The notes: a model not told the origin generated them from the letters alone. A stretch of 64,000 nt of DNA from Macrostomum lignano (GCA_002269645.1 NIVC01000327.1:248001-312000); one strand, 5' to 3'; counted from the stretch's first letter, positions 6,427 through 59,090 are shown. A program made the numbers and translations.

Positions 6427-6439
6427 GTGAGTGTCTGCT

Positions 6440-9078: not shown

Positions 9079-9195
9079 CCCTGTACTGTGGATTGGCTCT
9101 CATAGGCATGATTCTAGAATCGAAGTCGGGACTTAAATCGCTAAGAAAGTGTATTATCAATGTTTTTACCTTCACCACTGTCCGCACACCTGCAG

Positions 9196-9695: not shown

Positions 9696-9719
9696 GTGAG
9701 ACTGCTCTTTACTTCTGTT

Positions 9720-10130: not shown

Positions 10131-10207
10131 CTATAGAGCTACCACAGCACTTTACCCTACAAAAGTTCCCAAACGCAGCTAATCGCCCAGCGCCTACCCG
10201 CTCTCAG

Positions 10208-10627
10208 GTGACGCACCTGCAGTACGCAGATTGGCCGGACCACGGTACGCCCAGCAACTTGGACGAGTTCCTAAATTTCGTTAGCCGGGTCCGGGCCCAC
10301 CGAGCCGGCCACTTGGCACCCGTGGTAGTGCACTGCTCCGCTGGCATTGGCCGGACTGGCGTCCTCATTGCCATGGAAACCGCTGTCTGCCTGATTGAAG
10401 CCGGCTTGCCAGTGAAACCGCTGTGCTTGCTGCGCAGGATGCGAAACCAGCGGCCGATGCTCATTCAGACAGCCGGACAGTACAGGTTCGTGTGCGAGGC
10501 CGTTCTGCGCTACTGGCAACAGTCGGGCAGAGGCGTCGGCCTTGCTGACCACCAGCTCCAGACCGCCGCTCAACCGGACGAAGCCAACACCAACTCGGAA
10601 AACAACAACTCGGCTTCTGCTTGTTGA
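10208..10627 (+). CDS. PTPN3/PTPN4-like: Terminal PTP exon with catalytic motifs
   Basis: Acceptor CTCTCAG (10207), phase 0. WPDHG loop, HCSAGIGRTG active-site loop and IQTAGQY Q-loop are all intact; stop ends at 10627. Confidence 0.95.
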   Translation: MTHLQYADWPDHGTPSNLDEFLNFVSRVRAHRAGHLAPVVVHCSAGIGRTGVLIAMETAVCLIEAGLPVKPLCLLRRMRNQRPMLIQTAGQYRFVCEAVLRYWQQSGRGVGLADHQLQTAAQPDEANTNSENNNSASAC

Positions 10628-40000: not shown

Positions 40001-42374
40001 TGGGTCAGACTCAGCTCATTCTGAATGCATTATGGACTCACGTGCTGGGACACACAGAGACAGTTAGAGAAGGAATAGGCCTGTTTGATGAAGAGGTTAT
40101 AGCGGCTCTCAAGTCCTCTCTTTCTGTGATTGAGTGAAAATGCTGAGCTGGGTCAGACTCAGCTCATTCTGAATGCATGATGGACTCACGTGCTGGGACA
40201 CACAGAGACAGTTAGAGAAGGGATCGGCCTGTTTGATGAAGAGGTTATAGCGGCTCTCAAGTCCTCTCTTTCTGTGATTGAGTGAAAATGCTGAGCTGGG
40301 TCAGACTCAGCTCATTCTGAATGCATGATGGACTCACGTGCTGGGACACACAGAGACAGTTAGAGAAGGAATAGGCCTGTTTGATGAAGAGGTTATAGCG
40401 GCTCTCAAGTCCTCTCTTTCTGTGTTTGAGTGAAAATGCTGAGCTGGGTCAGACTCAGCTCATTCTGAATGCATGATGGACTCACGTGCTGGGACACACA
40501 GAGACAGTTAGAGAAGGAATCGGCCTGTTTGATGAAGAGATTATAGCGGCTCTCAAGTCCTCTCTTTCTGTGTTTGAGTGAAAATGCTGAGCTGGGTCAG
40601 ACTCAGCTCATTCTGAATGCATGATGGACTCACGTGCTGGGACACACAGAGACAGTTAGAGAAGGGATCGGCCTGTTTGATGAAGAGGTTATAGCGGCTC
40701 TCAAGTCCTCTCTTTCTGTGATTGAGTGAAAATGCTGAGCTGGGTCAGACTCAGCTCATTATGAATGCATGATGGACTCACGTGCATGCTGGGACACACA
40801 GAGACAGTTAGAGAAGGAATCGGCCTGTTTGATGAAGAGGTTATAGCGGCTCTCAAGTCCTCTCTTTCTGTGTTTGAGTGAAAATGCTGAGCTGGGTCAG
40901 ACTCAGCTCATTCTGAATGCATTATGGACTCACGTGCTGGGACACACAGAGACAGTTAGAGAAGGAATCGGCCTGTTTGATGAAGAGGTTATAGCGGCTC
41001 TCAAGTCCTCTCTTTCTGTGTTTGAGTGAAAATGCTGAGCTGGGTCAGACTCAGCTCATTCTGAATGCATGATGGACTCACGTGCTGGGACACACAAAGA
41101 CAGTTAGAGAAGGAATCGGCCTGTTTGATGAAGAGGTTATAGCGGCTCTCAAGTCCTCTCTTTCTGTGTTTGAGTGAAAATGCTGAGCTGGGTCAGACTC
41201 AGCTCATTCTGAATGCATGATGGACTCACGTGCTGGGACACACAGAGACAGTTAGAGAAGGGATCGGCCTGTTTGATGAAGAGGTTATAGCGGCTCTCAA
41301 GTCCTCTCTTTCTGTGTTTGAGTGAAAATGCTGAGCTGGGTCAGACTCAGCTCATTCTGAATGCATTATGGACTCACGTGCTGGGACACACAGAGACAGT
41401 TAGAGAAGGGATCGGCCTGTTTGATGAAGAGATTATAGCGGCTCTCAAGTCCTCTCTTTCTGTGATTGAGTGAAAATGCTGAGCTGGGTCAGACTCAGCT
41501 CATTCTGAATGCATTATGGACTCACGTGCTGGGACACACAGAGACAGTTAGAGAAGGGATCGGCCTGTTTGATGAAGAGATTATAGCGGCTCTCAAGTCC
41601 TCTCTTTCTGTGATTGAGTGAAAATGCTGAGCTGGGTCAGACTCAGCTCATTCTGAATACATGATGGACTCACGTGCTGGGACACACAGAGACAGTTAGA
41701 GAAGGAATCGGCCTGTTTGATTTCTTCGGCTATAGCTTTGTGTCTTTTTGTGTCTAGGGCCTAGTCAAATGACTGAAGGCTTAGTTTTGGTTTTATCTAC
41801 AAACGATATTTTTAAAAAGAGTATAATATGCTCCAAAATTGGTAGTGGGCCAACAAACGACAGGGGAACATCTCGGCGGGGCTTTTCGCATTTTTACGTA
41901 GACCGATGTCAGAGTCATTTTAGTTTGTCATGGGCAACTCTGTTTCTATTTAGACCCTTGCCATACGCCGTACACCATCAACATTTGAGCCAAATTGAGC
42001 CGAGTTGTCTAGGTGCGAAAAATTGGTTGGGCAGACTGTTTACGATAAGGGCTGTCTATTAGTCCAGTTTTACAGCGAACAGAAATGAAAATTCGCAAGT
42101 CCGTAGGAAGGATTCGGTTCAAATTTAAGCACGATTTTTCCTACCAAACAGTCAATCGTATTGTGCAGAATCCATGGGCCATACTCTTATAGGGGTAATA
42201 TGCAAATTGATCTGCATATCCTTATCTTTCTGTTAACTCTTGACTGTTGCGCAAACTTCGGTTCGTTTTCGCACTTTGAATCGACTCATGCACGTTCTAA
42301 GCATGCTAGCTAGACCAAACGAAATGTCAGAAACTTAATCTCGTATGGAAGCTCCTAGAAGTATGTATGGAAGA

Positions 42375-43070
42375 TGGAGAGGAAGGGGCGATGGAGAAGA
42401 AGGGGCGGATAGAGAAGAAGGGGCGGATAGAGAGGAAGGGGCGGATGGAGAGGAAGGGGCGGATGGAGAGGAAGGGGCGGATGGAGAGGAAGGGGTGGAT
42501 GGAGAGGAAGGGGTGGATGGAGAGGAAGGGGCGAATGGAGAGGAAGGGGCGGATGGAGAGGAAGGGGCGGATGGAGAGGAAGGGGCGGATGGAGAGGAAG
42601 GGGCGGATGGAGAGGAAGGGGCGGATGGAGAGGAAGGGGCGGATGGAGAGGAAGGGCGGATGGAGAGGAAGGGGCGGATGGAGAGGAAGGGGCGGATGGA
42701 GAGGAAGGGGCGGATGGAGAGGAAGGGGCGGATGGAGAGGAAGGGGCGGATGGAGAGGAAGGGGCGGATGGAGAGGAAGGGGCGGATGAAGAGGAAGGGG
42801 CGGATGGAGAGGAAGGGGCGGATGGAGAGGAAGGGGCGGATGGAGAGGAAGGGGCGGATGGAGAGGAAGGGGCGGATGGAGAGGAAGGGGCGGATGGAGA
42901 GGAAGGGGCGGATGGAGAGGAAGGGGCGGATGGAGAGGAAGGGGCGGATGAAGAGGAAGGGGCGGATGGAGAGGAAGGGCGGATGGAGAGGAAGGGGCGG
43001 ATGGAGAGGAAGGGGCGGATGGAGAGGAAGGGGCGGATGGAGGGAAGGGGCGGATGGAGAGGATAGTGGA
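42375..43070. repeat. 18-bp purine-rich minisatellite (GGAGAGGAAGGGGCGGAT)n
   Basis: About 38 copies; 6-aa periodicity in the ORF track. Confidence 0.96.
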
Positions 43071-44028
43071 TAGGGAGAAAGGATCCGCTGTCTCTCCTAG
43101 TCTCAGTGTCTATCTATATGTAGCTATTCTGCACCTTCAGATTTACGCATCAAAATCCTTTGGCTGATCTAATATTTGGATCCAGAAAACTTTGAAAGGT
43201 GAGTGGGCGCATAATGAATGGTGCAGTTGGCAAAGGAAGTGAAGAGAGAGAAAGAAAGAGAAAGGAAAAAGATATAGTGAGATAGATGTGCCCAGAGTGA
43301 GAGATGGATAATGCCATTCCATATAGATCAGCATGTTCGTGCATCTAAAGTTAAAAACTGAACGAAGAGGAAAAATAGGTCTTAAAAGAAAAGAACTTTA
43401 GGAACTTTTCTCGCGTTGTCATTGGTTAGCCTAGTTTATTGCTCAGCCATGAGGATTGGCTGTTCCTGGCTGCTTTTTTGGCGCAACCAATTAGCTATCA
43501 TGAAATGTGTTCCCATAGGTCTTGAACCTTTGGCATTGGATCCAACGTCTCTTCCTGCGTTTCGCGATATATACAAGCTACATAAAATTTAAGACTGATT
43601 GCCCTTAATTACTTTAAACTTTCATTTTCAAAGCTCTTCAATAGCATCTGACATCTGCAACATCGTTTGGAGATCGTACAACCGGATATCTGCATCTTTC
43701 GTGAAACTTTTAAAATATTTTTTCTAATTATTGGCTTTTTATTCATATAGGCTTAGTCCAGGTCAATTAACTTAATATCTCATTAGGTCTAACTTAGTTT
43801 TATTAGCTAATAAACTCAAATAGCAATTTAGGGTCTTATAAGTCTAGTGATATTGTAGTGATCAAATCCATAATTCTAGCTGTGCTTCTAGCTGTTCTAG
43901 CTATTACTGTGTAGACTAGCGTATATACTTCGTATATAAACTAAATTTAGTCGAAGACTAGGCCGTATAGGTTTGTTTAGTAGTTCTTTAAGTTTTTTTA
44001 CAAGGTCTAAATTAATAGAGAGACAGGT

Positions 44029-44388
44029 ATGGCAGCAATTAGAAGCAAGAAGGAGAGAGTCCAAGCCGCAGTGGACAGTGTAATTGAAAGAATTCGCACT
44101 GGCAAAGAGTGCAATTATCGAAAAATTGCTCAAGAATTTTCCGTACCTACCACCACCGTTTATGACAGAGCTCGCAGGCTGATGAACGGGCTGAAGGTGA
44201 CGGAAAAAAATACTGCCAAGCGGTATTTGACGCAGGCCGAGGAGCGAGTCTTCTGTGATGCAATCAAGCAGGCCGCTCGACAACAGGTCCCCATCACGAG
44301 GAAGAAGCTGCTCGAAATGGCAAGTGAGACTGTCCGCAACATCGGCGTTTCGAATGAGGAGCGCTGCGGTTTGCGTGACGCAACCAAG
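44029..44388 (+). CDS. pogo-family transposase exon 1 (psq-type HTH and first part of CENP-B/Tc5 HTH)
   Basis: NYRKIAQEFSVPTTTVYDR and YLTQAEERVFCDAI...PITRKKLLEMA motifs; phase-0 donor AAG|GTAGGC (44389). Confidence 0.85.
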
Positions 44389-44470
44389 GTAGGCCAAATT
44401 TTAAAATAATAAGAAGCCTGCTTGGACTCAAACATATTTAACTGTTAATTCTCTATCAATCGCATGTCTA

Positions 44471-47400
44471 TCTCTGAATCAGCACCTGTCTATCACCTCT
44501 CTATCAGCCGCCCGTCTGTCTCCTCTCTATCAGCCGCCCGTCTGTCTCCTCTCTATCAGCCGCCCGTCTGTCTCCTCTCTATCAGCCGCCCGTCTGTCTC
44601 CTCTCTATCAGCCCCCGTCTGTCTCCTCTCTATCAGCCGCCCGTCTGTCTCCTCTCTATCAGCTGCCCGTCTGTCTCCTCTCTATCAGCCGCCCGTCTGT
44701 CTCCTCTCTATCAGCCGCCCGTCTGTCTCCTCTCTATCAGCCGCCCGTCTGTCTCCTCTCTATCAGCCGCCCGTCTGTCTCCTCTCTATCAGCCGCCCGT
44801 CTGTCTCCTCTCTATCAGCCGCCCGTCTGTCTCCTCTCTATCAGCCGCCCGTCTGTCTCCTCTCTATCAGCCGCCCGTCTGTCTCCTCTCTATCAGCCGC
44901 CCGTCTGTCTCCTCTCTATCAGCCGCCCGTTAATCTCTGAATCAGCACCTGTCTATCACCTCTCTATCAGCCGCCCGTCTGTCTCCTCTCTATCAGCCGC
45001 CCGTCTGTCTCCTCTCTATCAGCCGCCCATCTGTCTCCTCTCTATCAGCCGCCCGTCTGTCTCCTCTCTATCCGCCGCCCGTCTGTCTCCTCTCTATCCG
45101 CCGCCCGTCTGTCTCCTCTCTATCAGCCGCCCGTCTGTCTCCTCTCTATCAGCACCTGTCTATCACCTCTCTATCAGCCGCCCGTCTGTCTCCTCTCTAT
45201 CAGCCGCCCGTCTGTCTCCTCTCTATCAGCCGCCCGTCTGTCTCCTCTCTATCAGCCGCCCGTCTGTCTGCTCTCTATCAGCCGCCCGTCTGTCTCCTCT
45301 CTATCAGCCGCCCGTCTGTCTCCTCTCTATCAGCCGCCCGTCTGTCACCTCTCTATCAGCCGCCCGTCTGTCTCCTCTCTATCAGCCGCCCGTCTGTCTC
45401 CTCTCTATCAGCCGCCCGTCTGTCTCCTCTCTATCCGCCGCCCGTCTGTCTCCTCTCTATCCGCCGCCCGTCTGTCTCCTCTCTATCAGCCGCCGGCGTC
45501 TGTCTCCTCTCTATCAGCCGCCCGTCTGTCTCCTCTCTATCAGCCGCCCGTCTGTCTCCTCTCTATCAGCCGCCCGTCTGTCTCCTCTCTATCAGCCGCC
45601 CGTCTGTCTCCTCTCTATCAGCCGCCCGTCTGTCTGCTCTCTATCAGCCGCCCGTCTGTCTCCTCTCTATCAGCCGCCCGTCTGTCTCCTCTCTATCAGC
45701 CGCCCGTCTGTCTCCTCTCTATCAGCCGCCCGTCTGTCTCCTCTCTATCCGCCGCCCGTCTGTCTCCTCTCTATCCGCCGCCCGTCTGTCTCCTCTCTAT
45801 CAGCCGCCGGCGCCCGTCTGTCTCCTCTCTATCAGCCGCCCGTCTGTCTCCTCTCTATCAGCCGCCCGTCTGTCTCCTCTCTATCAGCCGCCCGTCTGTC
45901 TCCTCTCTATCAGCCGCCCGTCTGTCTCCTCTCTATCAGCCGCCCGTCTGTCTCCTCTCTATCAGCCGCCCGTCGTCTCCTCTCTATCAGCCGCCCGTTA
46001 ATCTCTGAATCAGCACCTGTCTATCACCTCTCTATCAGCCGCCCGTCTGTCTCCTCTCTATCAGCCGCCCGTCTGTCTCCTCTCTATCAGCCGCCCATCT
46101 GTCTCCTCTCTATCAGCCGCCCGTCTGTCTCCTCTCTATCCGCCGCCCGTCTGTCTCCTCTCTATCCGCCGCCCGTCTGTCTCCTCTCTATCAGCCGCCC
46201 GTCTGTCTCCTCTCTATCAGCACCTGTCTATCACCTCTCTATCAGCCGCCCGTCTGTCTCCTCTCTATCAGCCGCCCGTCTGTCTCCTCTCTATCAGCCG
46301 CCCGTCTGTCTCCTCTCTATCAGCCGCCCGTCTGTCTGCTCTCTATCAGCCGCCCGTCTGTCTCCTCTCTATCAGCCGCCCGTCTGTCTCCTCTCTATCA
46401 GCCGCCCGTCTGTCACCTCTCTATCAGCCGCCCGTCTGTCTCCTCTCTATCAGCCGCCCGTCTGTCTCCTCTCTATCAGCCGCCCGTCTGTCTCCTCTCT
46501 ATCCGCCGCCCGTCTGTCTCCTCTCTATCCGCCGCCCGTCTGTCTCCTCTCTATCAGCCGCCGGCGCCCGTCTGTCTCCTCTCTATCAGCCGCCCGTCTG
46601 TCTCCTCTCTATCAGCCGCCCGTCTGTCTCCTCTCTATCAGCCGCCCGTCTGTCTCCTCTCTATCAGCCGCCCGTCTGTCTCCTCTCTATCAGCCGCCCG
46701 TCTGTCTGTTCTCTATCAGCCGCCCGTCTGTCTCCTCTCTATCAGCCGCCCGTCTGTCTCCTCTCTATCAGCCGCCCGTCTGTCTCCTCTCTATCAGCCG
46801 CCCGTCTGTCTCCTCTCTATCAGCCGCCCGTCTGTCTCCTCTCTATCAGCCGCCCGTCTGTCTCCTCTCTATCAGCCGCCCGTTAATCTCTGAATCAGCA
46901 CCTGTCTATCACCTCTCTATCAGCCGCCCGTCTGTCTCCTCTCTATCAGCCGCCCGTCTGTCTCCTCTCTATCAGCCGCCCGTCTGTCTCCTCTCTATCA
47001 GCCGCCCGTCTGTCTCCTCTCTATCAGCCGCCCGTCTGTCTCCTCTCTATCAGCCGCCCGTCTGTCTCCTCTCTATCAGCCGCCCGTTAATCTCTGAATC
47101 AGCACCTGTCTATCACCTCTCTATCAGCCGCCCGTCTGTCTCCTCTCTATCAGCCGCCCGTCTGTCTCCTCTCTATCAGCCGCCCGTCTGTCTCCTCTCT
47201 ATCCGCCGCCCGTCTGTCTCCTCTCTATCCGCCGCCCGTCTGTCTCCTCTCTATCAGCCGCCGGCGCCCGTCTGTCTCCTCTCTATCAGCCGCCCGTCTG
47301 TCTCCTCTCTATCAGCCGCCCGTCTGTCTCCTCTCTATCAGCCGCCCGTCTGTCTCCTCTCTATCAGCCGCCCGTCTGTCTCCTCTCTATCAGCCGCCCG

Positions 47401-50400
47401 TCTGTCTCCTCTCTATCAGCCGCCCGTCCGTCTCCTCTCTATCAGCCGCCCGTTAATCTCTGAATCAGCACCTGTCTATCACCTCTCTATCAGCCGCCCG
47501 TCTGTCTCCTCTCTATCAGCCGCCCGTCTGTCTCCTCTCTATCAGCCGCCCATCTGTCTCCTCTCTATCAGCCGCCCGTCTGTCTCCTCTCTATCCGCCG
47601 CCCGTCTGTCTCCTCTCTATCCGCCGCCCGTCTGTCTCCTCTCTATCAGCCGCCCGTCTGTCTCCTCTCTATCAGCACCTGTCTATCACCTCTCTATCAG
47701 CCGCCCGTCTGTCTCCTCTCTATCAGCCGCCCGTCTGTCTCCTCTCTATCAGCCGCCCGTCTGTCTGCTCTCTATCAGCCGCCCGTCTGTCTCCTCTCTA
47801 TCAGCCGCCCGTCTGTCTCCTCTCTATCAGCCGCCCGTCTGTCACCTCTCTATCAGCCGCCCGTCTGTCTCCTCTCTATCAGCCGCCCGTCTGTCTCCTC
47901 TCTATCAGCCGCCCGTCTGTCTCCTCTCTATCGCCGCCCGTCTGTCTCCTCTCTATCCGCCGCCCGTCTGTCTCCTCTCTATCAGCCGCCCGTCTGTCTC
48001 CTCTCTATCAGCCGCCCGTCTGTCTCCTCTCTATCAGCCGCCCGTCTGTCTCCTCTCTATCAGCCGCCCGTCTGTCTCCTCTCTATCAGCCGCCCGTCTG
48101 TCTCCTCTCTATCAGCCGCCCGTCTGTCTGCTCTCTATCAGCCGCCCGTCTGTCTCCTCTCTATCAGCCGCCCGTCTGTCTCCTCTCTATCAGCCGCCCG
48201 TCTGTCTCCTCTCTATCAGCCGCCCGTCTGTCTCCTCTCTATCAGCCGCCCGTCTGTCTCCTCTCTATCAGCCGCCCGTCTGTCTCCTCTCTATCAGCCG
48301 CCCGTCTGTCTCCTCTCTATCAGCCGCCCGTTAATCTCTGAATCAGCACCTGTCTATCACCTCTCTATCAGCCGCCCGTCTGTCTCCTCTCTATCAGCCG
48401 CCCGTCTGTCTCCTCTCTATCAGCCGCCCGTCTGTCTCCTCTCTATCAGCCGCCCGTCTGTCTCCTCTCTATCAGCCGCCCGTCTGTCTCCTCTCTATCA
48501 GCCGCCCGTCTGTCTCCTCTCTATCAGCCGCCCGTTAATCTCTGAATCAGCACCTGTCTATCACCTCTCTATCAGCCGCCCGTCTGTCTCCTCTCTATCA
48601 GCCGCCCGTCTGTCTCCTCTCTATCAGCCGCCCGTCTGTCTCCTCTCTATCCGCCGCCCGTCTGTCTTCTCTCTATCAGCCGCCCGTCTGTCTCCTCTCT
48701 ATCAGCCGCCCGTCTGTCTCCTCTCTATCGCCGCCCGTCTGTCTCCTCTCTATCAGCCGCCCGTCTGTCTCCTCTCTATCAGCCGCCCGTCTGTCTCCTC
48801 TCTATCAGCCGCCCGTCTGTCTCCTCTCTATCAGCCGCCCGTCTGTCTCCTCTCTATCAGCCGCCCGTCTGTCTCCTCTCTATCAGCCGCCCGTCTGTCT
48901 CCTCTCTATCAGCCGCCCGTCTGTCTCCTCTCTATCAGCCGCCCGTCTGTCACCTCTCTATCAGCCGCCCGTCTGTCTCCTCTCTATCAGCCGCCCGTCT
49001 GTCTCCTCTCTATCAGCACCTGTCTATCACCTCTCTATCAGCCGCCCGTCTGTCTCCTCTCTATCAGCCGCCCGTCTGTCTCCTCTCTATCAGCCGCCCG
49101 TCTGTCTCCTCTCTATCAGCCGCCCGTCTGTCTCCTCTCTATCAGCCGCCCGTCTGTCTCCTCTCTATCAGCCGCCCGTCTGTCTCCTCTCTATCAGCCG
49201 CCCGTTAATCTCTGAATCAGCACCTGTCTATCACCTCTCTATCAGCCGCCCGTCTGTCTCCTCTCTATCAGCCGCCCGTCTGTCTCCTCTCTATCAGCCG
49301 CCCGTCTGTCTCCTCTCTATCCGCCGCCCGTCTGTCTCCTCTCTATCCGCCGCCCGTATGTCTCCTCTCTATCAGCCGCCCGTCTGTCTCCTCTCTATCA
49401 GCCGCCCGTCTGTCTCCTCTCTATCAGCCGCCCGTTAATCTCTGAATCAGCACCTGTCTATCACCTCTCTATCAGCCGCCCGTCTGTCTCCTCTCTATCA
49501 GCCGCCGGCGCCCGTCTGTCTCCTCTCTATCAGCCGCCCGTCTGTCTCCTCTCTATCAGCCGCCGCGCCGTCTGTCTCCTCTCTATCAGCCGCCCGTCTG
49601 TCTCCTCTCTATCAGCCGCCCGTCTGTCTCCTCTCTATCAGCCGCCCGTCTGTCTCCTCTCTATCAGCCGCCCGTCTGTCTCCTCTCTATCAGCCGCCCG
49701 TCTGTCTGTTCTCTATCAGCCGCCCGTCTGTCTCCTCTCTATCAGCCGCCCGTCTGTCTCCTCTCTATCAGCCGCCCGTCTGTCTCCTCTCTATCAGCCG
49801 CCCGTCTGTCTCCTCTCTATCAGCCGCCCGTCTGTCTCCTCTCTATCAGCCGCCCGTCTGTCTCCTCTCTATCAGCCGCCCGTTAATCTCTGAATCAGCA
49901 CCTGTCTATCACCTCTCTATCAGCCGCCCGTCTGTCTCCTCTCTATCAGCCGCCCGTCTGTCTCCTCTCTATCAGCCGCCCGTCTGTCTCCTCTCTATCA
50001 GCCGCCCGTCTGTCTCCTCTCTATCAGCCGCCCGTCTGTCTCCTCTCTATCAGCCGCCCGTCTGTCTCCTCTCTATCAGCCGCCCGTCTGTCTCCTCTCT
50101 ATCAGCCGCCCGTTAATCTCTGAATCAGCACCTGTCTATCACCTCTCTATCAGCCGCCCGTCTGTCTCCTCTCTATCAGCCGCCCGTCTGTCTCCTCTCT
50201 ATCAGCCGCCCGTCTGTCTCCTCTCTATCCGCCGCCCGTCTGTCTCCTCTCTATCCGCCGCCCGTCTGTCTCCTCTCTATCAGCCGCCGGCGCCCGTCTG
50301 TCTCCTCTCTATCAGCCGCCCGTCTGTCTCCTCTCTATCAGCCGCCCGTCTGTCTCCTCTCTATCAGCCGCCCGTCTGTCTCCTCTCTATCAGCCGCCCG

Positions 50401-53400
50401 TCTGTCTCCTCTCTATCAGCCGCCCGTCTGTCTCCTCTCTATCAGCCGCCCGTCCGTCTCCTCTCTATCAGCCGCCCGTTAATCTCTGAATCAGCACCTG
50501 TCTATCACCTCTCTATCAGCCGCCCGTCTGTCTCCTCTCTATCAGCCGCCCGTCTGTCTCCTCTCTATCAGCCGCCCATCTGTCTCCTCTCTATCAGCCG
50601 CCCGTCTGTCTCCTCTCTATCCGCCGCCCGTCTGTCTCCTCTCTATCCGCCGCCCGTCTGTCTCCTCTCTATCAGCCGCCCGTCTGTCTCCTCTCTATCA
50701 GCACCTGTCTATCACCTCTCTATCAGCCGCCCGTCTGTCTCCTCTCTATCAGCCGCCCGTCTGTCTCCTCTCTATCAGCCGCCCGTCTGTCTGCTCTCTA
50801 TCAGCCGCCCGTCTGTCTCCTCTCTATCAGCCGCCCGTCTGTCTCCTCTCTATCAGCCGCCCGTCTGTCACCTCTCTATCAGCCGCCCGTCTGTCTCCTC
50901 TCTATCAGCCGCCCGTCTGTCTCCTCTCTATCAGCCGCCCGTCTGTCTCCTCTCTATCCCGCCCGTCTGTCTCCTCTCTATCCGCCGCCCGTCTGTCTCC
51001 TCTCTATCAGCCGCCCGTCTGTCTCCTCTCTATCAGCCGCCCGTCTGTCTCCTCTCTATCAGCCGCCCGTCTGTCTCCTCTCTATCAGCCGCCCGTCTGT
51101 CTCCTCTCTATCAGCCGCCCGTCTGTCTCCTCTCTATCAGCCGCCCGTCTGTCTGCTCTCTATCAGCCGCCCGTCTGTCTCCTCTCTATCAGCCGCCCGT
51201 CTGTCTCCTCTCTATCAGCCGCCCGTCTGTCTCCTCTCTATCAGCCGCCCGTCTGTCTCCTCTCTATCAGCCGCCCGTCTGTCTCCTCTCTATCAGCCGC
51301 CCGTCTGTCTCCTCTCTATCAGCCGCCCGTCTGTCTCCTCTCTATCAGCCGCCCGTTAATCTCTGAATCAGCACCTGTCTATCACCTCTCTATCAGCCGC
51401 CCGTCTGTCTCCTCTCTATCAGCCGCCCGTCTGTCTCCTCTCTATCAGCCGCCCGTCTGTCTCCTCTCTATCAGCCGCCCGTCTGTCTCCTCTCTATCAG
51501 CCGCCCGTCTGTCTCCTCTCTATCAGCCGCCCGTCTGTCTCCTCTCTATCAGCCGCCCGTTAATCTCTGAATCAGCACCTGTCTATCACCTCTCTATCAG
51601 CCGCCCGTCTGTCTCCTCTCTATCAGCCGCCCGTCTGTCTCCTCTCTATCAGCCGCCCGTCTGTCTCCTCTCTATCCGCCGCCCGTCTGTCTTCTCTCTA
51701 TCAGCCGCCCGTCTGTCTCCTCTCTATCAGCCGCCCGTCTGTCTCCTCTCTATCCGCCGCCCGTCTGTCTCCTCTCTATCAGCCGCCCGTCTGTCTCCTC
51801 TCTATCAGCCGCCCGTCTGTCTCCTCTCTATCAGCCGCCCGTCTGTCTCCTCTCTATCAGCCGCCCGTCTGTCTCCTCTCTATCAGCCGCCCGTCTGTCT
51901 CCTCTCTATCAGCCGCCCGTCTGTCTCCTCTCTATCAGCCGCCCGTCTGTCTCCTCTCTATCAGCCGCCCGTCTGTCACCTCTCTATCAGCCGCCCGTCT
52001 GTCTCCTCTCTATCAGCCGCCCGTCTGTCTCCTCTCTATCAGCACCTGTCTATCACCTCTCTATCAGCCGCCCGTCTGTCTCCTCTCTATCAGCCGCCCG
52101 TCTGTCTCCTCTCTATCAGCCGCCCGTCTGTCTCCTCTCTATCAGCCGCCCGTCTGTCTCCTCTCTATCAGCCGCCCGTCTGTCTCCTCTCTATCAGCCG
52201 CCCGTCTGTCTCCTCTCTATCAGCCGCCCGTTAATCTCTGAATCAGCACCTGTCTATCACCTCTCTATCAGCCGCCCGTCTGTCTCCTCTCTATCAGCCG
52301 CCCGTCTGTCTCCTCTCTATCAGCCGCCCGTCTGTCTCCTCTCTATCCGCCGCCCGTCTGTCTCCTCTCTATCCGCCGCCCGTATGTCTCCTCTCTATCA
52401 GCCGCCCGTCTGTCTCCTCTCTATCAGCCGCCCGTCTGTCTCCTCTCTATCAGCCGCCCGTTAATCTCTGAATCAGCACCTGTCTATCACCTCTCTATCA
52501 GCCGCCCGTCTGTCTCCTCTCTATCAGCCGCCCGTCTGTCTCCTCTCTATCAGCCGCCCGTCTGTCTCCTCTCTATCCGCCGCCCGTCTGTCTCCTCTCT
52601 ATCAGCCGCCCGTCTGTCTCCTCTCTATCAGCCGCCCGTTAATCTCTGAATCAGCACCTGTCTATCACCTCTCTATCAGCCGCCCGTCTGTCTCCTCTCT
52701 ATCAGCCGCCCGTCTGTCTCCTCTCTATCAGCCGCCCGTCTGTCTCCTCTCTATCCGCCGCCCGTCTGTCTCCTCTCTATCAGCCGCCCGTCTTTCTCCT
52801 CTCTATCAGCCGCCCGTCCTTCTCCTCTCTATCCGCCGCCCGTATGTCTCCTCTCTATCAGCCGCCCGTCTGTCTCCTCTCTATCAGCCGCCCGTCTGTC
52901 TCCTCTCTATCAGCCGCCCGTTAATCTCTGAATCAGCACCTGTCTATCACCTCTCTATCAGCCGCCCGTCTGTCTCCTCTCTATCAGCCGCCCGTCTGTC
53001 TCCTCTCTATCAGCCGCCCGTCTGTCTCCTCTCTATCAGCCGCCCGTCTGTCTCCTCTCTATCAGCCGCCCGTCTGTCTCCTCTCTATCAGCCGCCCGTC
53101 TGTCTCCTCTCTATCAGCTGCCCGTCTGTCTCCTCTCTATCAGCCGCCCGTCTGTCTCCTCTCTATCAGCCGCCCGTCTGTCTCCTCTCTATCAGCCGCC
53201 CGTTAATCTCTGAATCAGCACCTGTCTATCACCTCTCTATCAGCCGCCCGTCTGTCTCCTCTCTATCAGCCGCCCGTCTGTCTCCTCTCTATCAGCCGCC
53301 CGTCTGTCTCCTCTCTATCAGCCGCCCGTCTGTCTCCTCTCTATCAGCCGCCCGTCCTTCTCCTCTCTATCAGCCGCCCGTCTGTCTCCTCTCTATCAGC

Positions 53401-54180
53401 CGCCCGTTAATCTCTGAATCAGCACCTGTCTATCACCTCTCTATCAGCCGCCCGTCTGTCTCCTCTCTATCAGCCGCCCGTCTGTCTCCTCTCTATCAGC
53501 CGCTTGTCTGTCTCCTCTCTATCAGCCGCCCGTTAATCTCTGAATCAGCACCTGTCTATCACCTCTCTATCAGCCGCCCGTCTGTCTCCTCTCTATCAGC
53601 CGCCCGTCTGTCTCCTCTCTATCAGCCGCCCGTCTGTCTCCTCTCTATCAGCCGCCCGTCTGTCTCCTCTCTATCAGCCGCCCGTCTGTCTCCTCTCTAT
53701 CAGCCGCCCGTCTGTCTCCTCTCTATCCGCCGCCCGTCTGTCTCCTCTCTATCAGCCGCCCGTCTGTCTCCTCTCTATCAGCCGCCCGTCTGTCTCCTCT
53801 CTATCAGCCGCCCGTCTGTCTCCTCTCTATCAGCCGCCCGTCTGTCTCCTCTCTATCAGCCGCCCGTCTGTCTCCTCTCTATCAGCCGCCCGTCTGTCTC
53901 CTCTCTATCAGTCGCCCGTCTGTCTCCTCTCTATCAGCCGCCCGTCTGTCACCTCTCTATCAGCCGCCCGTCTGTCTCCTCTCTATCAGCCGCCCGTCTG
54001 TCTCCTCTCTATCAGCCGCCCGTCTGTCTCCTCTCTATCAGCCGCCCGTCTGTCTCCTCTCTATCAGCCGCCCGTCTGTCTCCTCTCTATCAGCCGCCCG
54101 TCTGTCTCCTCTCTATCAGCCGCCCGTCTGTCTCCTCTCTATCAGCCGCCCGTCTGTCTCCTCTCTATCAGCCGCCCGTT
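44471..54180. repeat. 26-bp minisatellite (TCCTCTCTATCAGCCGCCCGTCTGTC)n, ~370 units, filling transposase intron 1
   Basis: Continuous array with recurring variant TTAATCTCTGAATCAGCACCTGTCTATCACC. Confidence 0.98.
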
Positions 54181-54228
54181 TATCTCCTCAATGTGATTAT
54201 ACGAGTATATATTCTACTTGCCTACCAG

Positions 54229-55528
54229 GTCAAGCCAGCCGGACTGTCGAAGGGCTGGATTACCGGATTTCTGTTGCGCCATCCCGACATCGCTCAGCGA
54301 ACGCCGCAGACGGTGAATCCTGCCCGGGCGATCGTAACGGAGGGCCGCATTCGTGATTGGTTTTCCGAGCTGGCCGACTTCGATGACGATGACCTTGTCG
54401 ACGGCGCGCTGCAAGATCCGTCGCGAATTTTTAATTGTGACGAGATTGCAGTGCCGCAAGGATTGAAGTCTCACGCTGTTCTGGCAGAGAAAGGAATGGT
54501 AAACGTGGTGCAGAAGGTCCACGGCAGTGACCGGAAGCATACCACAGTTTTAATTTGTGTTCAATGCTCAGGTTCTCTATTGCCACCCCGCTTTGTTTTT
54601 CCAGGAAAGACGCAGCCTCGAATGGATGGCTATCCCACTGATTGTCATTATTCTTTTTCACCCAACGGGTGGATGACCACCACTGGGTTTGAGGAATTTA
54701 TTAAAAAAACATTCATGCCCTATCTAGAACAAAAGCGAGTTCGCCGTCCTGTTGTCCTTTTCACAGATTTACACGGCTCCAGATTTTCGCTGGAGGTTCT
54801 GGAGTATCTGAGGCAGCAGAAGGTTGTGCTCTACGGGCTGGTGCCGAACGCAACGCACGTCATGCAGCCTCTGGACCTCGCTGTGTTTCGTCCCGTCAAG
54901 ATGGGATGGCGCGAGCTTCTCGCCGACAGGTCCCGGAGTGCTGCGATTGGAGACTCTGTCACCAGGCTGCGATTCGTGGATATGCTCCGCGAGGTCCTGG
55001 CAGAGCGGGCTACTCCGCAGAACATCATGGCTGGCTTCCGAAAAAGTGGCATTTTTCCGCGGAACCCTGATGCTCTAGCGTATGACAAGCTCTGCAAGCG
55101 GCAAGACCCGGCTCCTAAGCAGCAAGCAGCAGGTGAGAAGGATTGTGAATGCGTGCTAAAAGCAAGCAACACCGCCCCCACCTCTAGCCTCCCACAGAAA
55201 AAATTTAAATCAAAAAAGTGCCAAACAGCCTCAGGCTCTGTGGAGCGCTGCTTCGAGGATGTTCTTGGCACCGCTAAGCTTCACGACTTGCAAACGAAGC
55301 CAGCAACGACCGACAATGATCGCGTACTGCAGCAGCTGCTGCTGCGCCTGACCGGACAGGTGAACTGCCAACAGATCAGTGACGAGCACGTGAGCTCCGA
55401 CCAGCAGAGCACTGACAGCGAGGACCAGATCGAGAGCAGCCCACTGCATCATCCCTCTCTCGATGAGGATACCGTCGAGGCGGTTGAACCACAGAGTGAG
55501 GATTTGCTCGATGCAGAGAGACAGTCTG
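54229..55528 (+). CDS. pogo-family transposase exon 2 (end of CENP-B HTH and DD35D catalytic domain)
   Basis: Acceptor CCTACCAG (54228), phase 0. GWITGFLLRHP, FNCDE, WMT..F..F, LFTDLHGSR and HVMQPLD motifs; 35 residues between the second and third Asp. Phase-1 donor G|GTGAGT (55529). Confidence 0.92.
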
Positions 55529-55649
55529 GTGAGTAGTCGGTAAATTTTGAAAAGTAAACTCAAATTAACGTATAGTATACAAGTAAATTTCACGTAAAGA
55601 CGTAAAAGATGTGACACTGTAAATTACATTGTACACTACTTTAAGACCA

Positions 55650-56240
55650 TCTTCCTAATTTTCTCTCCTCTCCTCTCTCCTCTCTCCTCTCTCCCCCTCC
55701 TTCTCTCCTCTGCTCTCCCTTCTCCCCTCCTCTCCCTTCTCCCCTCTCCTCTCCCTCCTCCCCTCCTCTCCCTTTTCCCCTCTCCTCTCCCTTCTCCCCT
55801 CCTCTCCCTTCTCCCCTCCTCTCCCTTCTCCCCTCCTCTCCCTTCTCCCCTCCTCTCCCTTCTCCTCTCTCCTCTTCCTTCTCCCCTCTCCTCTCCCTTC
55901 TCCCCTCCTCTCCCTTCTCCCCTCCTCTCCCTTCTCCCCTCCTCTCCCTTCTCCCCTCCTCTCCCTTCTCCCCTCCTCTCCCTTCTCCCCTCTCCTCTCC
56001 CTTCTCCCCTCCTCTCCCTTCTCCCCTCCTCTCCCTTCTCCCCTCCTCTCCCTTCTCCTCTCTCCTCTTCCTTCTCCCCTCCTCTTCCTTCTCCCCTCCT
56101 CTTCCTTCTCCCCTCCTCTCCCTTCTCCCCTCTTCGCTCCCTTCTCCCCTTCTCTCCATTCTCCCATCCTCTCCCTTCTCCCCTCTCCTCTCATCTTCCT
56201 TATTTCCCCCTCTTCTCTCTCCCTTCTTTCTTTCTCATCT
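55650..56240. repeat. CT-rich tract (CTCCCCTCCTCTCCCTT)n in transposase intron 2
   Basis: Polypyrimidine tandem units. Confidence 0.92.
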
Positions 56241-56375
56241 CCTGTCTATGTTACACAGTCATGCGCTATATTTTATATCTGATCATTAACTTAAAAGCTT
56301 ATCGACTTCATCATTCATATATATTTTTTCTTCATGATTGCTAAGTTTGAGCTACAAATTATTTATTTCGTTCAG

Positions 56376-57484
56376 GTGCCTTTTGCTCGGTGACGTCAGT
56401 ATCACCCGCAGCTCGAGAAACAGCCGAGTCGATGGCGTTCCCGATAAAGCGGAACCGGACTCCAGTTTCCGGCAAGAAAAGAAGAACGTCCGTTTACCAG
56501 GACATTCCGCATCCTAACTTAACTAGCCGCTCTACTTTAGCCTTTTTCAGACTAAGACAGCAAAAGCGTCAGGCTGCTCTGGACGCCAAGGCCGCACGGC
56601 AGACCGCTCGGAGGCTTCGGGCACAGCAGCGTCAGCGTCAAGGTTCCCGGCGACTGCAGTCGAAGCAGACGGTCGCAGCTGAGCAACCGGTCGCCCAATC
56701 TGCCGTGCTGGATATGTCCGTCGCTTTAGGTCGGCTTGAGAGCAAGGCGAAGTCGTTGAATTGCTCCTTAGGTAAGGCAGATTCTTTTGGAAATTGTTTT
56801 TTTGACTCCGTCCGGCAGGTGCTGAGTTCCGAAGGCATCAATTCCGACGCCGACAGACTTCGATCAGACAGCTGCGCTTTCCTAGAGCAAAACTCCTATG
56901 TAAATGGTGAGAGTATCGTTGACTTTTTGGAAATGCCACTTAATGACTATTTACAAAAAATGAAACGTTCAAGTACCTATGCTGATCATCTTATTATCGT
57001 TGCATTAGCCAATTTCTTAGACAGGCCTTTTCAGATTTACCAGCCTGACCGTCCGGAGCCGGTAGTCATCATGCCAGAGGATCGCCACCCAGAAGGGCAA
57101 CCAATCAAGCTGGCGCACATCCCAGAGCTGCACTATCTGCCGATGCTGCCGCTACCTCTGCCGGAGCTAAGCGTTGACTGCTGGGTGCTGGTTGCCGTGC
57201 AGGCAACTTGCAGAGGACGAAAAGCTTGGCAGCATTACCCGTGTCGAGTCATTCAACTCCAGGGCGATGGCCAAGTCGTTGTCTCTGCCTGCACTCAGTC
57301 GGTGACAAACTGGATGGCTGGAGGTCAAAAGCCATTCATATTCCCGGCCAAGAGTGACGAGTTCAGCGCATTGGTGAGTGAGGTCGCAGTTTTACCCAAT
57401 CCCCATTTTCCTACGGGAAGGAATCCTGGATTCCTCTGGACCCGTGATCAGCTCATGAATGCTCGCAGCCGCCTTATTCACTGA
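56376..57484 (+). CDS. Exon 3 of the transposase gene: basic coiled segment, OTU-like cysteine protease domain and terminal beta-rich module
   Basis: Acceptor TTTCGTTCAG (56375), phase 1 (G+GT=Gly). ADSFGNCFFDSV...LR...YLQKM...TYADHLIIVALANFLDRPFQIY...LAHIPELHY is the OTU pattern. Confidence 0.82.
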
Positions 57485-57559
57485 GTTGATCACTAGGCCT
57501 AGAAATTACGTCCCCATCGTTCTATCACATTTTATGAATTTTATGAACTCAAATGACCG

Positions 57560-59090
57560 TTCACTGCTCATTTAATTTCCTGCATTGCTCAACAATTGCC
57601 TCATTGCCTAACCTTCAAATCATAATGAATGCTAACTTCACTTTGACATTGCTTCTATCAAACATCACCATGCACAAGACTTTCATCAAAAGTTTAAAAT
57701 CTAAAAAAACAAAAAAATTACAAGTATTGCTTGCCTATTTTTCTTCAGCACATTCGCACTAAAATGACTGCTCACTGACTCAAGCTCTCTCATCTATATT
57801 TCCTCTCCTCTCCCCTGTCATCTCGCTCTCTTCTCACCCTCTCTTGTCGCTTCTCTCTTCTCTCCCCTACCATCATCCCTCTCATCCCTCTATCCCCTCT
57901 CCTCTCTACCATCCTCTCCTCTCTCCCCTTCTCCTCTCTCATCTCTCCTCTCCCTCTCCTCTCTCATTTCCTTTCTCCCTCCTTTCTCATCTTCCGGCCT
58001 CTCTCCATTCTCACCTATCCTCTCATCTCCTTTTTCATCTCCTTTCTCCCCTCTCCCTTTTTCTTTCTCTCTCATCTCCGCCTATCATCTCTCAGCTTGA
58101 CTCTAATCTATTCGCTTTTCCCTTCTCTCTCCTCTCTCATCTCCCTTCTCCCCTCTCATCCGCTCTCTATCTCCTTTCTCACCTCTCACCTCTCATCTTC
58201 CCTCTTTATCTTTGCACTGTACTCAAAATTGAAAAAAAAACAAAAAAATTACAAGTACATGTATTGCTCGCCTATTTTGCTTCAGCACATTCGCACTAAA
58301 AATTACTGCACACTGATTGCTCATTAACTTTCATTTAATTTCCTGCATTGTTCAACAATTGCCTCATTGCCTAACCTGCACTCTCTATTTAAATCATAAT
58401 GAATACTAACTCACTTTGACTTGTACATTGCTTCTATCAAACATCACCATGCACAAGACTTTCATCAAAAGTTTAAAATCTAAAAAAAACAAAAAAATTA
58501 CAAGTATTGCTTGCCTATTTTTCTTCAGCACATTCGCACTAAAATGACTGCTCACTGACTCAAGCTCTCTCATCTATATTTCCTCTCCTCTCCTCTCCTC
58601 AGCTGTCATCTCGCTCTCTTCTCACCCTCTTCTGTCGCTTCTCTCTTCTCTCCCTTATCATCTTCCCTCTCATCCCTCTATCCACTCTCCTCTCTACCAT
58701 CCTTTCCTCTCTCCCCTTCTCCTCTCTCCTCTCCCTCTCCGCTCTCATTTCCTTTCTCATCTTCCCTATCTCCTCTCTCCAATCTCCCCTATCATCTCCC
58801 TTCTTCCCTCTCCTCTCTCATCTCCTTTTTCCCTCCTTTCTCATCTTCCGGCCTCTCTCCCTTCTCCATTCTGCCCTATCCTCTCACCCCCTTTTTCATC
58901 TTCTTTCTTCCCTCTCCCTTCCTCTTTATTCTCTTTCATCTCCGCCTATCATCTCTCAGCTCCCCTCTCCCATCTTTGCACTGTACTCAAAATTGAAAAA
59001 CAAAAAAATTACAAGCATTGCTTGCCTATTTTGCTTCAGCACATTCGCACTAAAAATTACTGCATACTGACTGCTCATTATCATTAATTT
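57560..59090. repeat. Complex local duplication (~770-bp blocks with CT-rich cores)
   Basis: AAAAAATTACAAG..TTGCT(T/C)GCCTATTTT..CAGCACATTCGCACTAAA recurs near 57712, 58244, 58493 and 59004. Confidence 0.85.

What the first reader, a model, noticed from the sequence alone, without database searches (positions are those of the whole stretch)
44029..57484. Spliced pogo (DD35D) transposase fused to an OTU-type deubiquitinase domain
Seen: join(44029-44388, 54229-55528, 56376-57484) = 2769 nt, 922 aa, with strong GT-AG sites and matching phases (0, 1) and no stops. Architecture: psq-HTH, CENP-B HTH, intact D-D35-D, basic coil, OTU-like domain (GNC...TYADH...HY), then a beta-rich module (CWVLVAV...HYPCRV...FIFPAKSD...VAVLPNP) resembling Tudor/SH3-like tails I recall on some invertebrate transposases. 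Established: OTU domains are Cys-His deubiquitinases and have been reported in Helitrons and Ginger elements; I do not recall them as a standard part of pogo transposases. Inference: a transposase carrying its own deubiquitinase and a possible chromatin reader, or a domesticated gene. Caveat: catalytic Cys and His are present, but the usual Asp of DGNC is Phe and His+2 is Leu, so activity may be weak or absent.
Basis: partly seen in the sequence, partly recalled or inferred. Interest (0 to 1): 0.85.

Follow-up and report, generated by a model that had tools for sequence, protein, structure and literature searches.

The report
Pogo transposase carrying OTU deubiquitinase domain
A three-exon gene in what looks like a Macrostomum flatworm genome encodes a pogo-type cut-and-paste transposase with an OTU (deubiquitinase-type) protease domain inserted before its barrel-shaped tail. 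I found this combination in only two other sequences and in no paper, although other transposon families are known to carry such proteases.

Summary
Pfam finds DDE_1 and OTU above their cut-offs. D191/D300/D336 form an intact DD35D triad.

The best evidence that the exons belong together is not the splice sites: 28 of 108 nearby GT-AG pairs for intron 2 also stay open. It is a 3.2-kb Logan contig (L001) that is collinear and intronless from start to stop codon at 49-57% identity. A second, more distant pogo+OTU protein (P0070, 27% identity) has the same domain order up to where its ORF stops, 27 nt from the contig end.

The OTU domain models at pLDDT above 90 and superposes on OTUD3 (TM 0.84). 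Cys694 and His806 are conserved.

The tail (aa 816-922) models confidently as a beta-rich domain. It is probably homologous (hhalign E 8e-5, probability 60%) to the tails of OTU-less pogo relatives, so the OTU looks inserted into an older architecture. Its Tudor/SH3 resemblance is weak.

I found no terminal inverted repeats. Both introns are filled with minisatellites. Active element versus domesticated gene stays open.

OTU or Ulp1 domains on Ginger1, Helitron and Mutator proteins are published; pogo+OTU is not in the papers searched. I rate it a new variant of a known kind, of moderate interest.

The parts
44029..44388 (+). Exon 1 (aa 1-120): psq-like HTH and the first half of the CENP-B/Tc5-type HTH. 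The ATG is at 44029 and an in-frame stop lies upstream at 44008.
   Evidence: The start codon aligns with the start of the L001 ORF.
44389..54228 (+). Intron 1 (9840 nt, GT..AG, phase 0). A 26-bp minisatellite of about 375 copies fills 44488-54189.
   Evidence: L001 is gapless across this junction. The Pfam HTH_Tnp_Tc5 hit at aa 71-144 bridges it.
54229..55528 (+). Exon 2 (aa 121-553, plus the first base of codon 554): the rest of HTH2, the DDE_1 catalytic core and the acidic, poorly conserved linker.
54421..55068 (+). RNase H-fold DD35D catalytic core. D191 is at 54439-54441, D300 at 54766-54768 and D336 at 54874-54876.
   Evidence: Pfam DDE_1 at 51 bits. The triad columns align with 11 pogo relatives. 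Coordinates were checked. The core is 71% identical to L001.
55529..56375 (+). Intron 2 (847 nt, GTGAGT..TTCAG, phase 1). A CT-rich 17-bp tandem array fills 55664-56241. If the intron is unspliced, an in-frame stop follows at 55534-55536.
56376..57484 (+). Exon 3 (the last two bases of codon 554, then aa 555-922 and the TGA stop at 57482-57484): basic motif and coil, OTU domain, and tail.
56468..56695 (+). Basic motif KKRR-TSVYQDIPHPNLTSRSTL followed by an Arg/Gln-rich helix. The motif (basic run, IP, LTS) recurs in OTU-less pogo relatives.
   Evidence: by visual comparison of P0116, P0118, P0119 and P0120. Coordinates were checked.
56723..57157 (+). OTU cysteine-protease domain of the OTUD3/OTUD5 type. 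The catalytic Cys694 is at 56795-56797 and His806 at 57131-57133.
   Evidence: Pfam OTU at 32.3 bits. AF2 pLDDT is above 90. Foldseek matches OTUD3 4bou with TM 0.84 and rmsd 2.2 A. A profile of the domain hits OTUD5 at E 9e-35. Cys and His are conserved in L001 and P0070.
57161..57481 (+). C-terminal beta-rich tail (aa 816-922). It is probably homologous to the C-terminal tails of OTU-less pogo relatives, and its fold is possibly Tudor/SH3-like.
   Evidence: AF2 mean pLDDT 91.2 and pTM 0.82 with a 10-sequence alignment. hhalign against the other tails gives E 8.4e-5 and probability 60%. It is 55% identical to L001. Weak PDB hits go to Tudor domains and bL19.

Best explanation
What it is. The locus encodes a member of a small, old sublineage of pogo-superfamily DNA transposases. 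Reading from the N-terminus, the protein has two helix-turn-helix DNA-binding domains, a DD35D RNase H-fold catalytic core and an acidic linker. These are followed by a basic motif with a coiled helix, an OTUD-type OTU cysteine-protease domain and a beta-rich barrel-like tail.

How the architecture arose. OTU-less relatives already have the basic motif and the tail. The OTU domain was therefore most likely inserted between two pre-existing C-terminal modules, probably once.

What is shown. The domain identities, the intact catalytic residues of both enzymes, and the collinearity with two independent homologues.

What is inferred.
1. The two minisatellite-filled introns are removed by cis-splicing, giving one 922-aa protein.
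2. The transposase binds element or target DNA through its HTH domains and cuts and pastes like other pogo elements.
3. The tethered OTU removes ubiquitin, or a ubiquitin-like modifier, either from the transposase itself or from chromatin and repair factors at the break. This would stabilise the transposase or steer repair, as has been proposed for Ginger1 and Helitron proteases.
4. The tail helps dock the complex on chromatin.

Status of this copy. The window copy is coding-intact but has no detectable terminal inverted repeats. It is either an immobilised copy or on its way to domestication.
For: Architecture and exon linkage.
- Searches give the ORF and the Pfam domains.
- L001 is collinear from start to stop.
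- P0070/L003 is a second pogo+OTU ORF with an intact DDD triad and a DGDC Cys loop.

OTU fold. AF2 pLDDT is above 90. Foldseek matches OTUD3, OTUD5, Otu2 and OTUD1. The family profile hits OTUD5 at E 9e-35.

Selection. Against L001, non-synonymous differences are far below saturated synonymous ones in the DDE core (pN 0.18 vs pS 0.74), the tail (0.30 vs 0.75) and the OTU domain (0.36 vs 0.67). Identity is 71/55/48% in those modules and 33% in the linker.

Ancestral tail and motif. See, and the confident tail model.

Single acquisition. The motif FT[DN]LH is shared only by the three OTU-bearing proteins. A neighbour-joining tree groups them with bootstrap 134/200.

Transposon behaviour. L001 carries a premature TAA, a frameshift and D300N, which is the usual decay of element copies. 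The nearest relatives are ordinary pogo transposases.

Mechanistic precedent. PMC2836005 describes Ginger1 transposases with a C-terminal OTU or Ulp1 domain. PMC9741609 shows that Helitron-encoded VTD deubiquitinases are active and notes that the transposon OTU domains remain untested.
Against: - There is no RNA evidence for either splice. For intron 2 the open frame is not statistically remarkable.
- No terminal inverted repeats were found within about 1 kb on either side, there is no second copy in the window, and a 9.8-kb intron is odd for a mobile element.
- The Asp at Cys-3 is Phe (Tyr in L001), and no acidic or amide residue sits at His+2. Only a Cys-His dyad is evident, so the domain could be a weak enzyme or a ubiquitin binder.
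- The link from the tail to the Tudor fold is weak.
- The single-insertion clade has only 67% bootstrap support.
- The substrate and the benefit of deubiquitination are inferred only by analogy.
Confidence: 0.5

Rival explanations
1. It is a domesticated host gene. A former pogo-OTU transposase lost its terminal repeats, acquired introns, and now serves the flatworm as a DNA- or chromatin-targeted deubiquitinase or regulator, as CENP-B, POGK and POGZ derive from pogo transposases in vertebrates.
For: - No terminal inverted repeats were found.
- The gene has two introns, one of 9.8 kb.
- There is a single copy in the window.
- No near-identical protein turned up in 1.84 billion cluster representatives or in the word search.
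- The ORF is fully intact, with conserved start and stop positions.
- Repeated pogo domestication is documented in PMC7386202.
Against: - The full DD35D triad is retained.
- The only close homologue, L001, is decayed: it has a stop, a frameshift and D300N. That is not expected of a conserved host gene.
- The distribution is very patchy: three sequences at 27-49% identity.
- The window's own genome seems absent from the protein collections, so copy number is simply unknown.
Confidence: 0.3
2. There are two separate products. The transposase ends at the stop at 55534-55536 (555 aa). Exon 3 is expressed on its own, for example by SL trans-splicing to the AG at 56375, giving a 350-aa OTU-plus-tail protein that starts at Met573 (MAFPIKR...).
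For: - In M. lignano about 39% of genes are trans-spliced, and about 7% of transcripts are polycistronic precursors (PMC5730564).
- A stop follows the donor site immediately.
- An in-frame Met lies 19 codons into exon 3.
- The open-frame join is not statistically compelling by itself.
Against: - In both L001 and L003 the DDE and OTU parts lie in one uninterrupted frame with no stop between them.
- The strongest donor and the strongest acceptor are phase-compatible.
- Similarity to L001, though weak in this indel-rich linker, already starts at the first codons of exon 3, upstream of that Met.
Confidence: 0.1
3. It is a dead copy. An intronless pogo-OTU ORF was broken by two minisatellite insertions or expansions, and the GT-AG borders are fortuitous.
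For: - Both interruptions consist almost wholly of tandem repeats of the kind that litter the whole window.
- The homologues are intronless at both positions.
Against: - Removing exactly GT..AG restores residue-for-residue collinearity at junction 1 and the correct phase at junction 2.
- All three exons are free of stops and frameshifts over 2.8 kb, and the catalytic residues are intact.
- The donor and acceptor sites are near consensus.
Confidence: 0.1

Closest known systems
Pogo superfamily transposases (pogo, Tigger, pogoR, Passer; IS630-Tc1-mariner group, DD35D)
   Same: It has the psq-like and CENP-B/Tc5-like HTH domains, the DDE_1 core and exact DD35D spacing. It is 27-33% identical to pogo-type proteins such as P0113-P0121, one of which is annotated 'Pogo transposable element with KRAB domain' in Frankliniella fusca.
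   Different: It carries an OTU domain, which the two pogo surveys read here do not mention. No terminal inverted repeats were found at this copy. It has two long introns. I did not assign it to a named pogo family.
Ginger1 DNA transposons (Bao, Kapitonov and Jurka 2010, PMC2836005)
   Same: A DDE-type transposase carries a C-terminal OTU (pfam02338) protease domain. It is found in invertebrates, and some copies have 1-4 introns.
   Different: The Ginger1 catalytic domain is a Gypsy-integrase-like DDE with YPYY, zinc-finger and GPY/F motifs. It is not a pogo DD35D core with HTH domains. This is an independent acquisition in an unrelated transposase superfamily.
Helitron/Helentron proteins with OTU or VTD deubiquitinase domains (PMC9741609)
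   Same: A mobile-element protein carries a deubiquitinase-class cysteine protease. Helitron VTD domains were shown to cleave ubiquitin and NEDD8.
   Different: Those are rolling-circle RepHel proteins, not cut-and-paste transposases. The paper states that transposon OTU domains have not been tested for activity.
Human OTUD3/OTUD5 (DUBA)-type OTU deubiquitinases
   Same: These are the best structural and profile matches: 4bou with TM 0.84, and OTUD5 at E 9e-35. The Cys-loop GNC and the His-loop HY motifs are shared.
   Different: Sequence identity is only 14-20%. The Asp of DGNC is Phe. His+2 is Leu where OTUD5 has Asn and OTUD3 has Asp.
Unnamed OTU-plus-tail proteins P0008, P0060, P0069 and P0078 (Logan and metagenome-derived)
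   Same: In P0060, P0069 and P0078 the OTU domain is followed directly by a tail of the same pattern ([FY].AV.Y ... F.WP). Those tails are homologous to the pogo tails (hhalign E 4e-6, probability 87%).
   Different: In P0008, P0060 and P0069 the N-terminal part is a different, Pfam-negative module, not a pogo transposase. The direct match between the window's tail and these tails is not significant.

Membership tests
Pogo superfamily transposase | DDE_1 (PF03184) RNase H-fold catalytic domain | tested here: met
   51 bits against a cut-off of 22.
Pogo superfamily transposase | Catalytic triad D, D, D with 35 residues between the second and third Asp | tested here: met
   D191, D300 and D336. 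The spacing was counted directly, and the columns align with 11 relatives.
Pogo superfamily transposase | N-terminal paired HTH domains (psq type and CENP-B/Tc5 type) | tested here: inconclusive
   HTH_Tnp_Tc5 scores 15.4 bits (cut-off 22.2) and HTH_psq 11.9 bits (cut-off 20.4) in the window protein. Both domains pass their cut-offs in P0070, P0114 and P0116. The aligned columns included those regions.
Pogo superfamily transposase | Terminal inverted repeats flanked by a TA target-site duplication | tested here: not met
   No inverted repeat above shuffled background was found between 43060-44028 and 57485-58700. The flanks run into satellites, so the ends may be lost or lie further out.
Pogo superfamily transposase | Multiple dispersed copies, or evidence of mobility | not testable with these tools
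   Only a 64-kb window is available, it holds one copy, and the host genome is not in the searchable collections.
OTU deubiquitinase (PF02338; OTUD subfamily) | OTU profile match above the curated threshold | tested here: met
   32.3 bits against 23.3. A profile of this domain and its neighbours hits OTUD5 at E 9e-35.
OTU deubiquitinase (PF02338; OTUD subfamily) | OTU fold | tested here: met
   The AF2 model has pLDDT above 90 over about 145 residues. Foldseek gives 4bou at TM 0.84 and rmsd 2.2 A, and probability 1.00 for many OTU structures.
OTU deubiquitinase (PF02338; OTUD subfamily) | Catalytic Cys in the Cys loop and His in the His loop | tested here: met
   Cys694 (GNC) and His806 (HY). 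These columns are invariant or nearly so in about 104 neighbours, and are conserved in L001 and P0070.
OTU deubiquitinase (PF02338; OTUD subfamily) | Third triad residue (Asp/Asn at His+2, or Asp at Cys-3) | tested here: not met
   Cys-3 is Phe (Tyr in L001, Asp in P0070) and His+2 is Leu (Met in L001). His+2 is also non-polar in most neighbouring OTU domains.
OTU deubiquitinase (PF02338; OTUD subfamily) | Isopeptidase activity on ubiquitin or a ubiquitin-like modifier | not testable with these tools
   This needs a biochemical assay.
Tudor/Royal-family or SH3-like barrel (the tail) | Significant sequence or structure match to a known Tudor, chromo, MBT or SH3-like domain | tested here: inconclusive
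   There is no Pfam hit. The best Foldseek PDB matches have E of 0.03 and TM of about 0.42, to ribosomal protein chains that I take from memory to be bL19. FMRP tandem Tudor ranks 43rd. The tail-family profile hits the PHF19 and KDM4C Tudor domains and two chains I take to be PHF20 Tudor, at E of only 0.2-1.4. P0078's tail has a weak MBT hit at E 0.011.

The most novel reading that the evidence does not exclude
Pogo-OTU-barrel is an ancient, selectively maintained transposase lineage in which a tethered, catalytically active deubiquitinase is needed for transposition, possibly guided by a chromatin-reading barrel. In the TIR-less, intron-bearing window copy the same machinery may instead have been co-opted as a sequence-targeted chromatin deubiquitinase of the flatworm.

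A second possibility is also not excluded. The two minisatellite-filled introns may be recent intron gains into an ancestrally intronless ORF, because L001 and L003 lack introns at both sites.
Probability: 0.25. Interest if true: 0.7.

Novelty: new variant of a known kind. Interest (0 to 1): 0.5.

Why it matters
Deubiquitinase-type proteases have been picked up independently by several unrelated mobile elements: OTU or Ulp1 by Ginger1, OTU or VTD by Helitrons, and Ulp1 by Mutator elements. Why a transposon benefits from one is unknown, and the transposon OTU domains have never been assayed (PMC9741609).

A pogo element with an OTU domain adds another independent acquisition. It also sits in the mechanistically simplest class of elements: a single-protein, cut-and-paste system of the Tc1/mariner/pogo type that is routinely tested in cell-based assays (for example Passer, PMC9976928). 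That would make the question directly testable by comparing wild type with a Cys694 mutant in excision and integration assays.

The work also defines a recurrent C-terminal barrel domain. It is shared by a pogo sublineage and by another, unnamed OTU-carrying protein family.

Tried and rejected
- Word-indexed homologue search with exon 3 alone found nothing, not even P0001. Low-complexity basic words probably swamped the candidate list. The exhaustive HMMER search was needed.
- Exact look-ups of the 922-aa product, the 555-aa unspliced product and the 350-aa Met-start product were all absent from the collection. No existing gene model could be consulted.
- Rfam and tRNA scans of the window were empty.
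- TIR searches found only CT/GA-rich satellite matches at background score. Flank self-BLAST found only a local tandem duplication of the 3' flank.
- An HMM built from the two tails alone found nothing significant beyond P0003 among the fetched proteins. The relationship to the other tails appeared only with profile-profile comparison.
- dN/dS against L001 is unusable as a ratio, because synonymous sites are saturated (pS 0.67-0.98). Only pN far below pS is reported.
The tail was re-modelled with the tail alignment.
- Foldseek of the tail against viral structures was uninformative.
- The TIR check on relatives was inconclusive. L004 shows repeated inverted 15-bp motifs around the ORF, while L001, L003 and L005 have too little flank.
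- I considered that the OTU exon belongs to a neighbouring unrelated element (Helitron or Ginger). I rejected this because L001 and L003 carry DDE and OTU in one frame, and no Rep/helicase or integrase ORF lies nearby.

Full report
**1. Observation**

This gives 922 codons and a TGA stop, with no internal stop. The borders are AAG|GTAGGC...CCTACCAG|G and CTG|GTGAGT...TTCGTTCAG|G, in phases 0 and 1.

Read without splicing, exon 1's frame stops at 44407-44409 and exon 2's frame stops at 55534-55536. The exon 3 frame is closed upstream at 56348.

Both introns are almost entirely tandem repeats:
- Intron 1 (9840 nt) holds a 26-bp minisatellite of about 375 copies at 44488-54189.
- Intron 2 (847 nt) holds a CT-rich 17-bp array at 55664-56241.

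**2. Domains**

Pfam gives DDE_1 at 51 bits (cut-off 22) and OTU at 32.3 bits (cut-off 23.3). It also gives sub-threshold HTH_Tnp_Tc5 (aa 71-144, spanning junction 1) and HTH_psq hits.

The catalytic triad is D191, D300 and D336, with 35 residues between the last two. These columns align with the triad of eleven pogo relatives.

**3. Are the exons really one gene?**

The open frame alone is weak evidence for intron 2. Of 108 GT/AG pairs in the neighbourhood, 28 also keep the frame open. The chosen pair does combine the best donor (8/9 consensus) with the best polypyrimidine tract.

The strong evidence comes from homologues. An exhaustive HMMER search of exon 3 against 1.84 billion cluster representatives gave one close hit and one tail fragment:
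- P0001 (E 1.8e-58), which Pfam shows to be DDE_1 plus OTU.
- P0003, a 77-aa fragment matching the tail.

Both lie on one 3191-bp Logan contig, L001 (SRR30276804), next to an HTH ORF. TBLASTN shows that L001 is collinear with the whole model and has no introns. It matches aa 6-813 at 49% identity and aa 818-918 at 57%. The alignment is gapless across junction 1, and the start and stop codons fall at the same alignment positions.

L001 itself is damaged. It has a TAA inside the DDE core, a frameshift just before the tail, and Asn in place of the second catalytic Asp.

A local phmmer of the transposase half against the 112 OTU hits revealed a second, more distant fusion. This is P0070 (838 aa, Logan DRR639055, contig L003). 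It has HTH_psq, HTH_Tnp_Tc5, DDE_1 and OTU all above their cut-offs, an intact DDD triad and a canonical DGDC Cys loop. It is collinear with the window protein over aa 31-811 at 27% identity. Its ORF stops 27 nt before the contig end, after a few residues that resemble the start of the tail, so its tail could not be checked.

None of the nine other pogo relatives found has an OTU domain.

**4. The OTU domain**

With a 33-sequence alignment, AlphaFold2 models aa 670-814 at pLDDT above 90. Foldseek against the PDB returns OTUD3 (4bou, TM 0.84, rmsd 2.2 A), then OTUD5, yeast Otu2 and OTUD1. A profile of the domain and its neighbours hits OTUD5 at E 9e-35.

Cys694 and His806 sit in columns that are invariant or nearly so across about 104 neighbouring OTU domains. 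Both are conserved in L001 and P0070.

The Asp normally three residues before the Cys is Phe here. It is Tyr in L001 and Asp in P0070. His+2 is Leu. What is evident is a Cys-His dyad. Activity is plausible but unproven.

**5. The tail and the basic motif are older than the OTU**

The C-termini of the OTU-less relatives P0113, P0114, P0115, P0116 and P0121 end in a segment with the pattern [FW]V.V.Y ... YP..V ... W.WP..D ... I...P...RG.F. The window's tail follows the same pattern.

Profile-profile comparisons gave these results:

| Comparison | E-value | Probability |
|---|---|---|
| Window + L001 tails vs the pogo tails | 7.5e-4 | 25% |
| Window + L001 tails vs the eight-sequence tail profile | 8.4e-5 | 60% (70 columns) |
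| Pogo tails vs tails that follow OTU in P0060, P0069, P0078 | 4e-6 | 87% |
| Window + L001 tails vs P0060, P0069, P0078 tails directly | 0.086 | not significant |

With the ten-sequence tail alignment, AlphaFold2 gives a confident beta-rich model (mean pLDDT 91.2, pTM 0.82).

The nearest PDB folds are only weak. The top hits are ribosomal protein chains (bL19 by my recollection) at TM of about 0.42, and FMRP tandem Tudor ranks 43rd. The tail profile's best PDB sequence hits are the PHF19 and KDM4C Tudor domains and two chains I take to be PHF20 Tudor, at E of 0.2-1.4, which is not significant. 'Tudor/SH3-like' is therefore a lead, not a result.

The conserved motif KKRR..IP..LTS, followed by a charged helix, is also visible in P0116, P0118, P0119 and P0120.

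The three OTU-bearing proteins share FT[DN]LH at the second Asp, where the others have DGH. A neighbour-joining tree groups them with bootstrap 134/200. The simplest reading is one insertion of an OTU domain between the coil and the tail of an existing pogo architecture.

**6. Selection**

Against L001, identity by module is as follows:

| Module | Identity to L001 |
|---|---|
| DDE core | 71% |
| HTH2 | 56% |
| Tail | 55% |
| Basic region | 52% |
| OTU | 48% |
| HTH1 | 34% |
| Linker | 33% |

Synonymous sites are saturated, so no dN/dS ratio is quoted. Non-synonymous differences stay far lower in the DDE core, the tail and the OTU domain. All of these modules have therefore been under long-term constraint.

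**7. Host and context**

A Macrostomum lignano UniRef protein (A0A1I8F3W3) is collinear with window 5808-10278, including a 45-residue stretch at 97.8% identity. The window is therefore from Macrostomum or something very close.

M. lignano is known to be rich in simple and tandem repeats. About 39% of its genes are trans-spliced, and some of its transcripts are polycistronic (PMC5730564). That keeps alive the rival in which exon 3 is expressed separately.

No terminal inverted repeats were found around the gene, and there is no second copy in the window. The window's own proteins are not in the searchable collections, so copy number in the genome is unknown.

**8. Comparison with what is known**

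C-terminal OTU or Ulp1 domains on DDE transposases are published for Ginger1, OTU for Helitrons and Ulp1 for Mutator elements (PMC2836005). Helitron VTD deubiquitinases are enzymatically active, and the same paper notes that transposon OTUs remain untested (PMC9741609).

Full-text searches for OTU or deubiquitinase together with pogo, Tigger or DDE_1 found nothing relevant. The two pogo surveys do not mention OTU or ubiquitin.

**9. Verdict**

It is a new variant of a known kind, namely transposase plus deubiquitinase-type protease, rather than a new kind.

Three questions remain open: whether the introns are spliced as modelled, whether the OTU is active, and whether this copy is a mobile element or a domesticated gene.

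My estimates are:
- about 0.5 for a transposon-borne or recently immobilised pogo-OTU transposase acting as described;
- 0.3 for a domesticated gene;
- 0.1 for separate products;
- 0.1 for a dead copy.

Noticed in passing
window 44488-54189 and 55664-56241: Both introns of the gene consist almost entirely of tandem repeats: a 26-bp unit of about 375 copies (9.7 kb) and a CT-rich 17-bp array. The two homologous contigs have no intron at either position. These may be intron gains or expansions driven by minisatellites, or the contigs may be mRNAs.
   Followed up: partly
window 24007-25025, 31683-32176, 39409-41721: A 148-bp satellite (97-98% matches between copies) occurs in three separate arrays. 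The first 20 kb of the window also holds many other minisatellite arrays.
   Followed up: no
window 5808-10278 (PTP exon about 9309-9560): There is a protein-tyrosine-phosphatase exon (Pfam Y_phosphatase, E 1.6e-28). A Macrostomum lignano UniRef gene model (A0A1I8F3W3, named 'LSM14 domain-containing') is collinear with three pieces of this region, one at 97.8% identity over 45 aa. This identifies the likely host genus.
   Followed up: partly
window 28162-30462 and 32694-35250: A 766-aa intact ORF has DUF1258, DUF4218 and Transposase_21 hits, which I take to be EnSpm/CACTA-like. Downstream is what may be a second, fragmented copy split over three ORFs; only one of the three has a weak Transposase_21 hit.
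   Followed up: no
window 57568-58336 vs 58331-59090: The 3' flank of the gene is tandemly duplicated, as a unit of about 770 bp at 82-92% identity.
   Followed up: no
proteins P0008, P0060, P0069, P0088 (not in the window): A Pfam-negative N-terminal module with motifs DFAENY, SDG.GSQFKN and HGKGP.DG.GG..KR is fused to an OTU domain. In P0060 and P0069 a tail of the pogo type follows. This looks like another, unnamed OTU-carrying mobile-element protein family.
   Followed up: partly
window 37236-38567: A 443-aa ORF has no Pfam match.
   Followed up: no
L001 1-130: The homologous contig begins with about 6.5 copies of a 20-bp tandem repeat (CCGTTGCTTAAYTACTTAA) just upstream of the start codon. 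The contig may be genomic DNA that breaks off inside a repeat.
   Followed up: no
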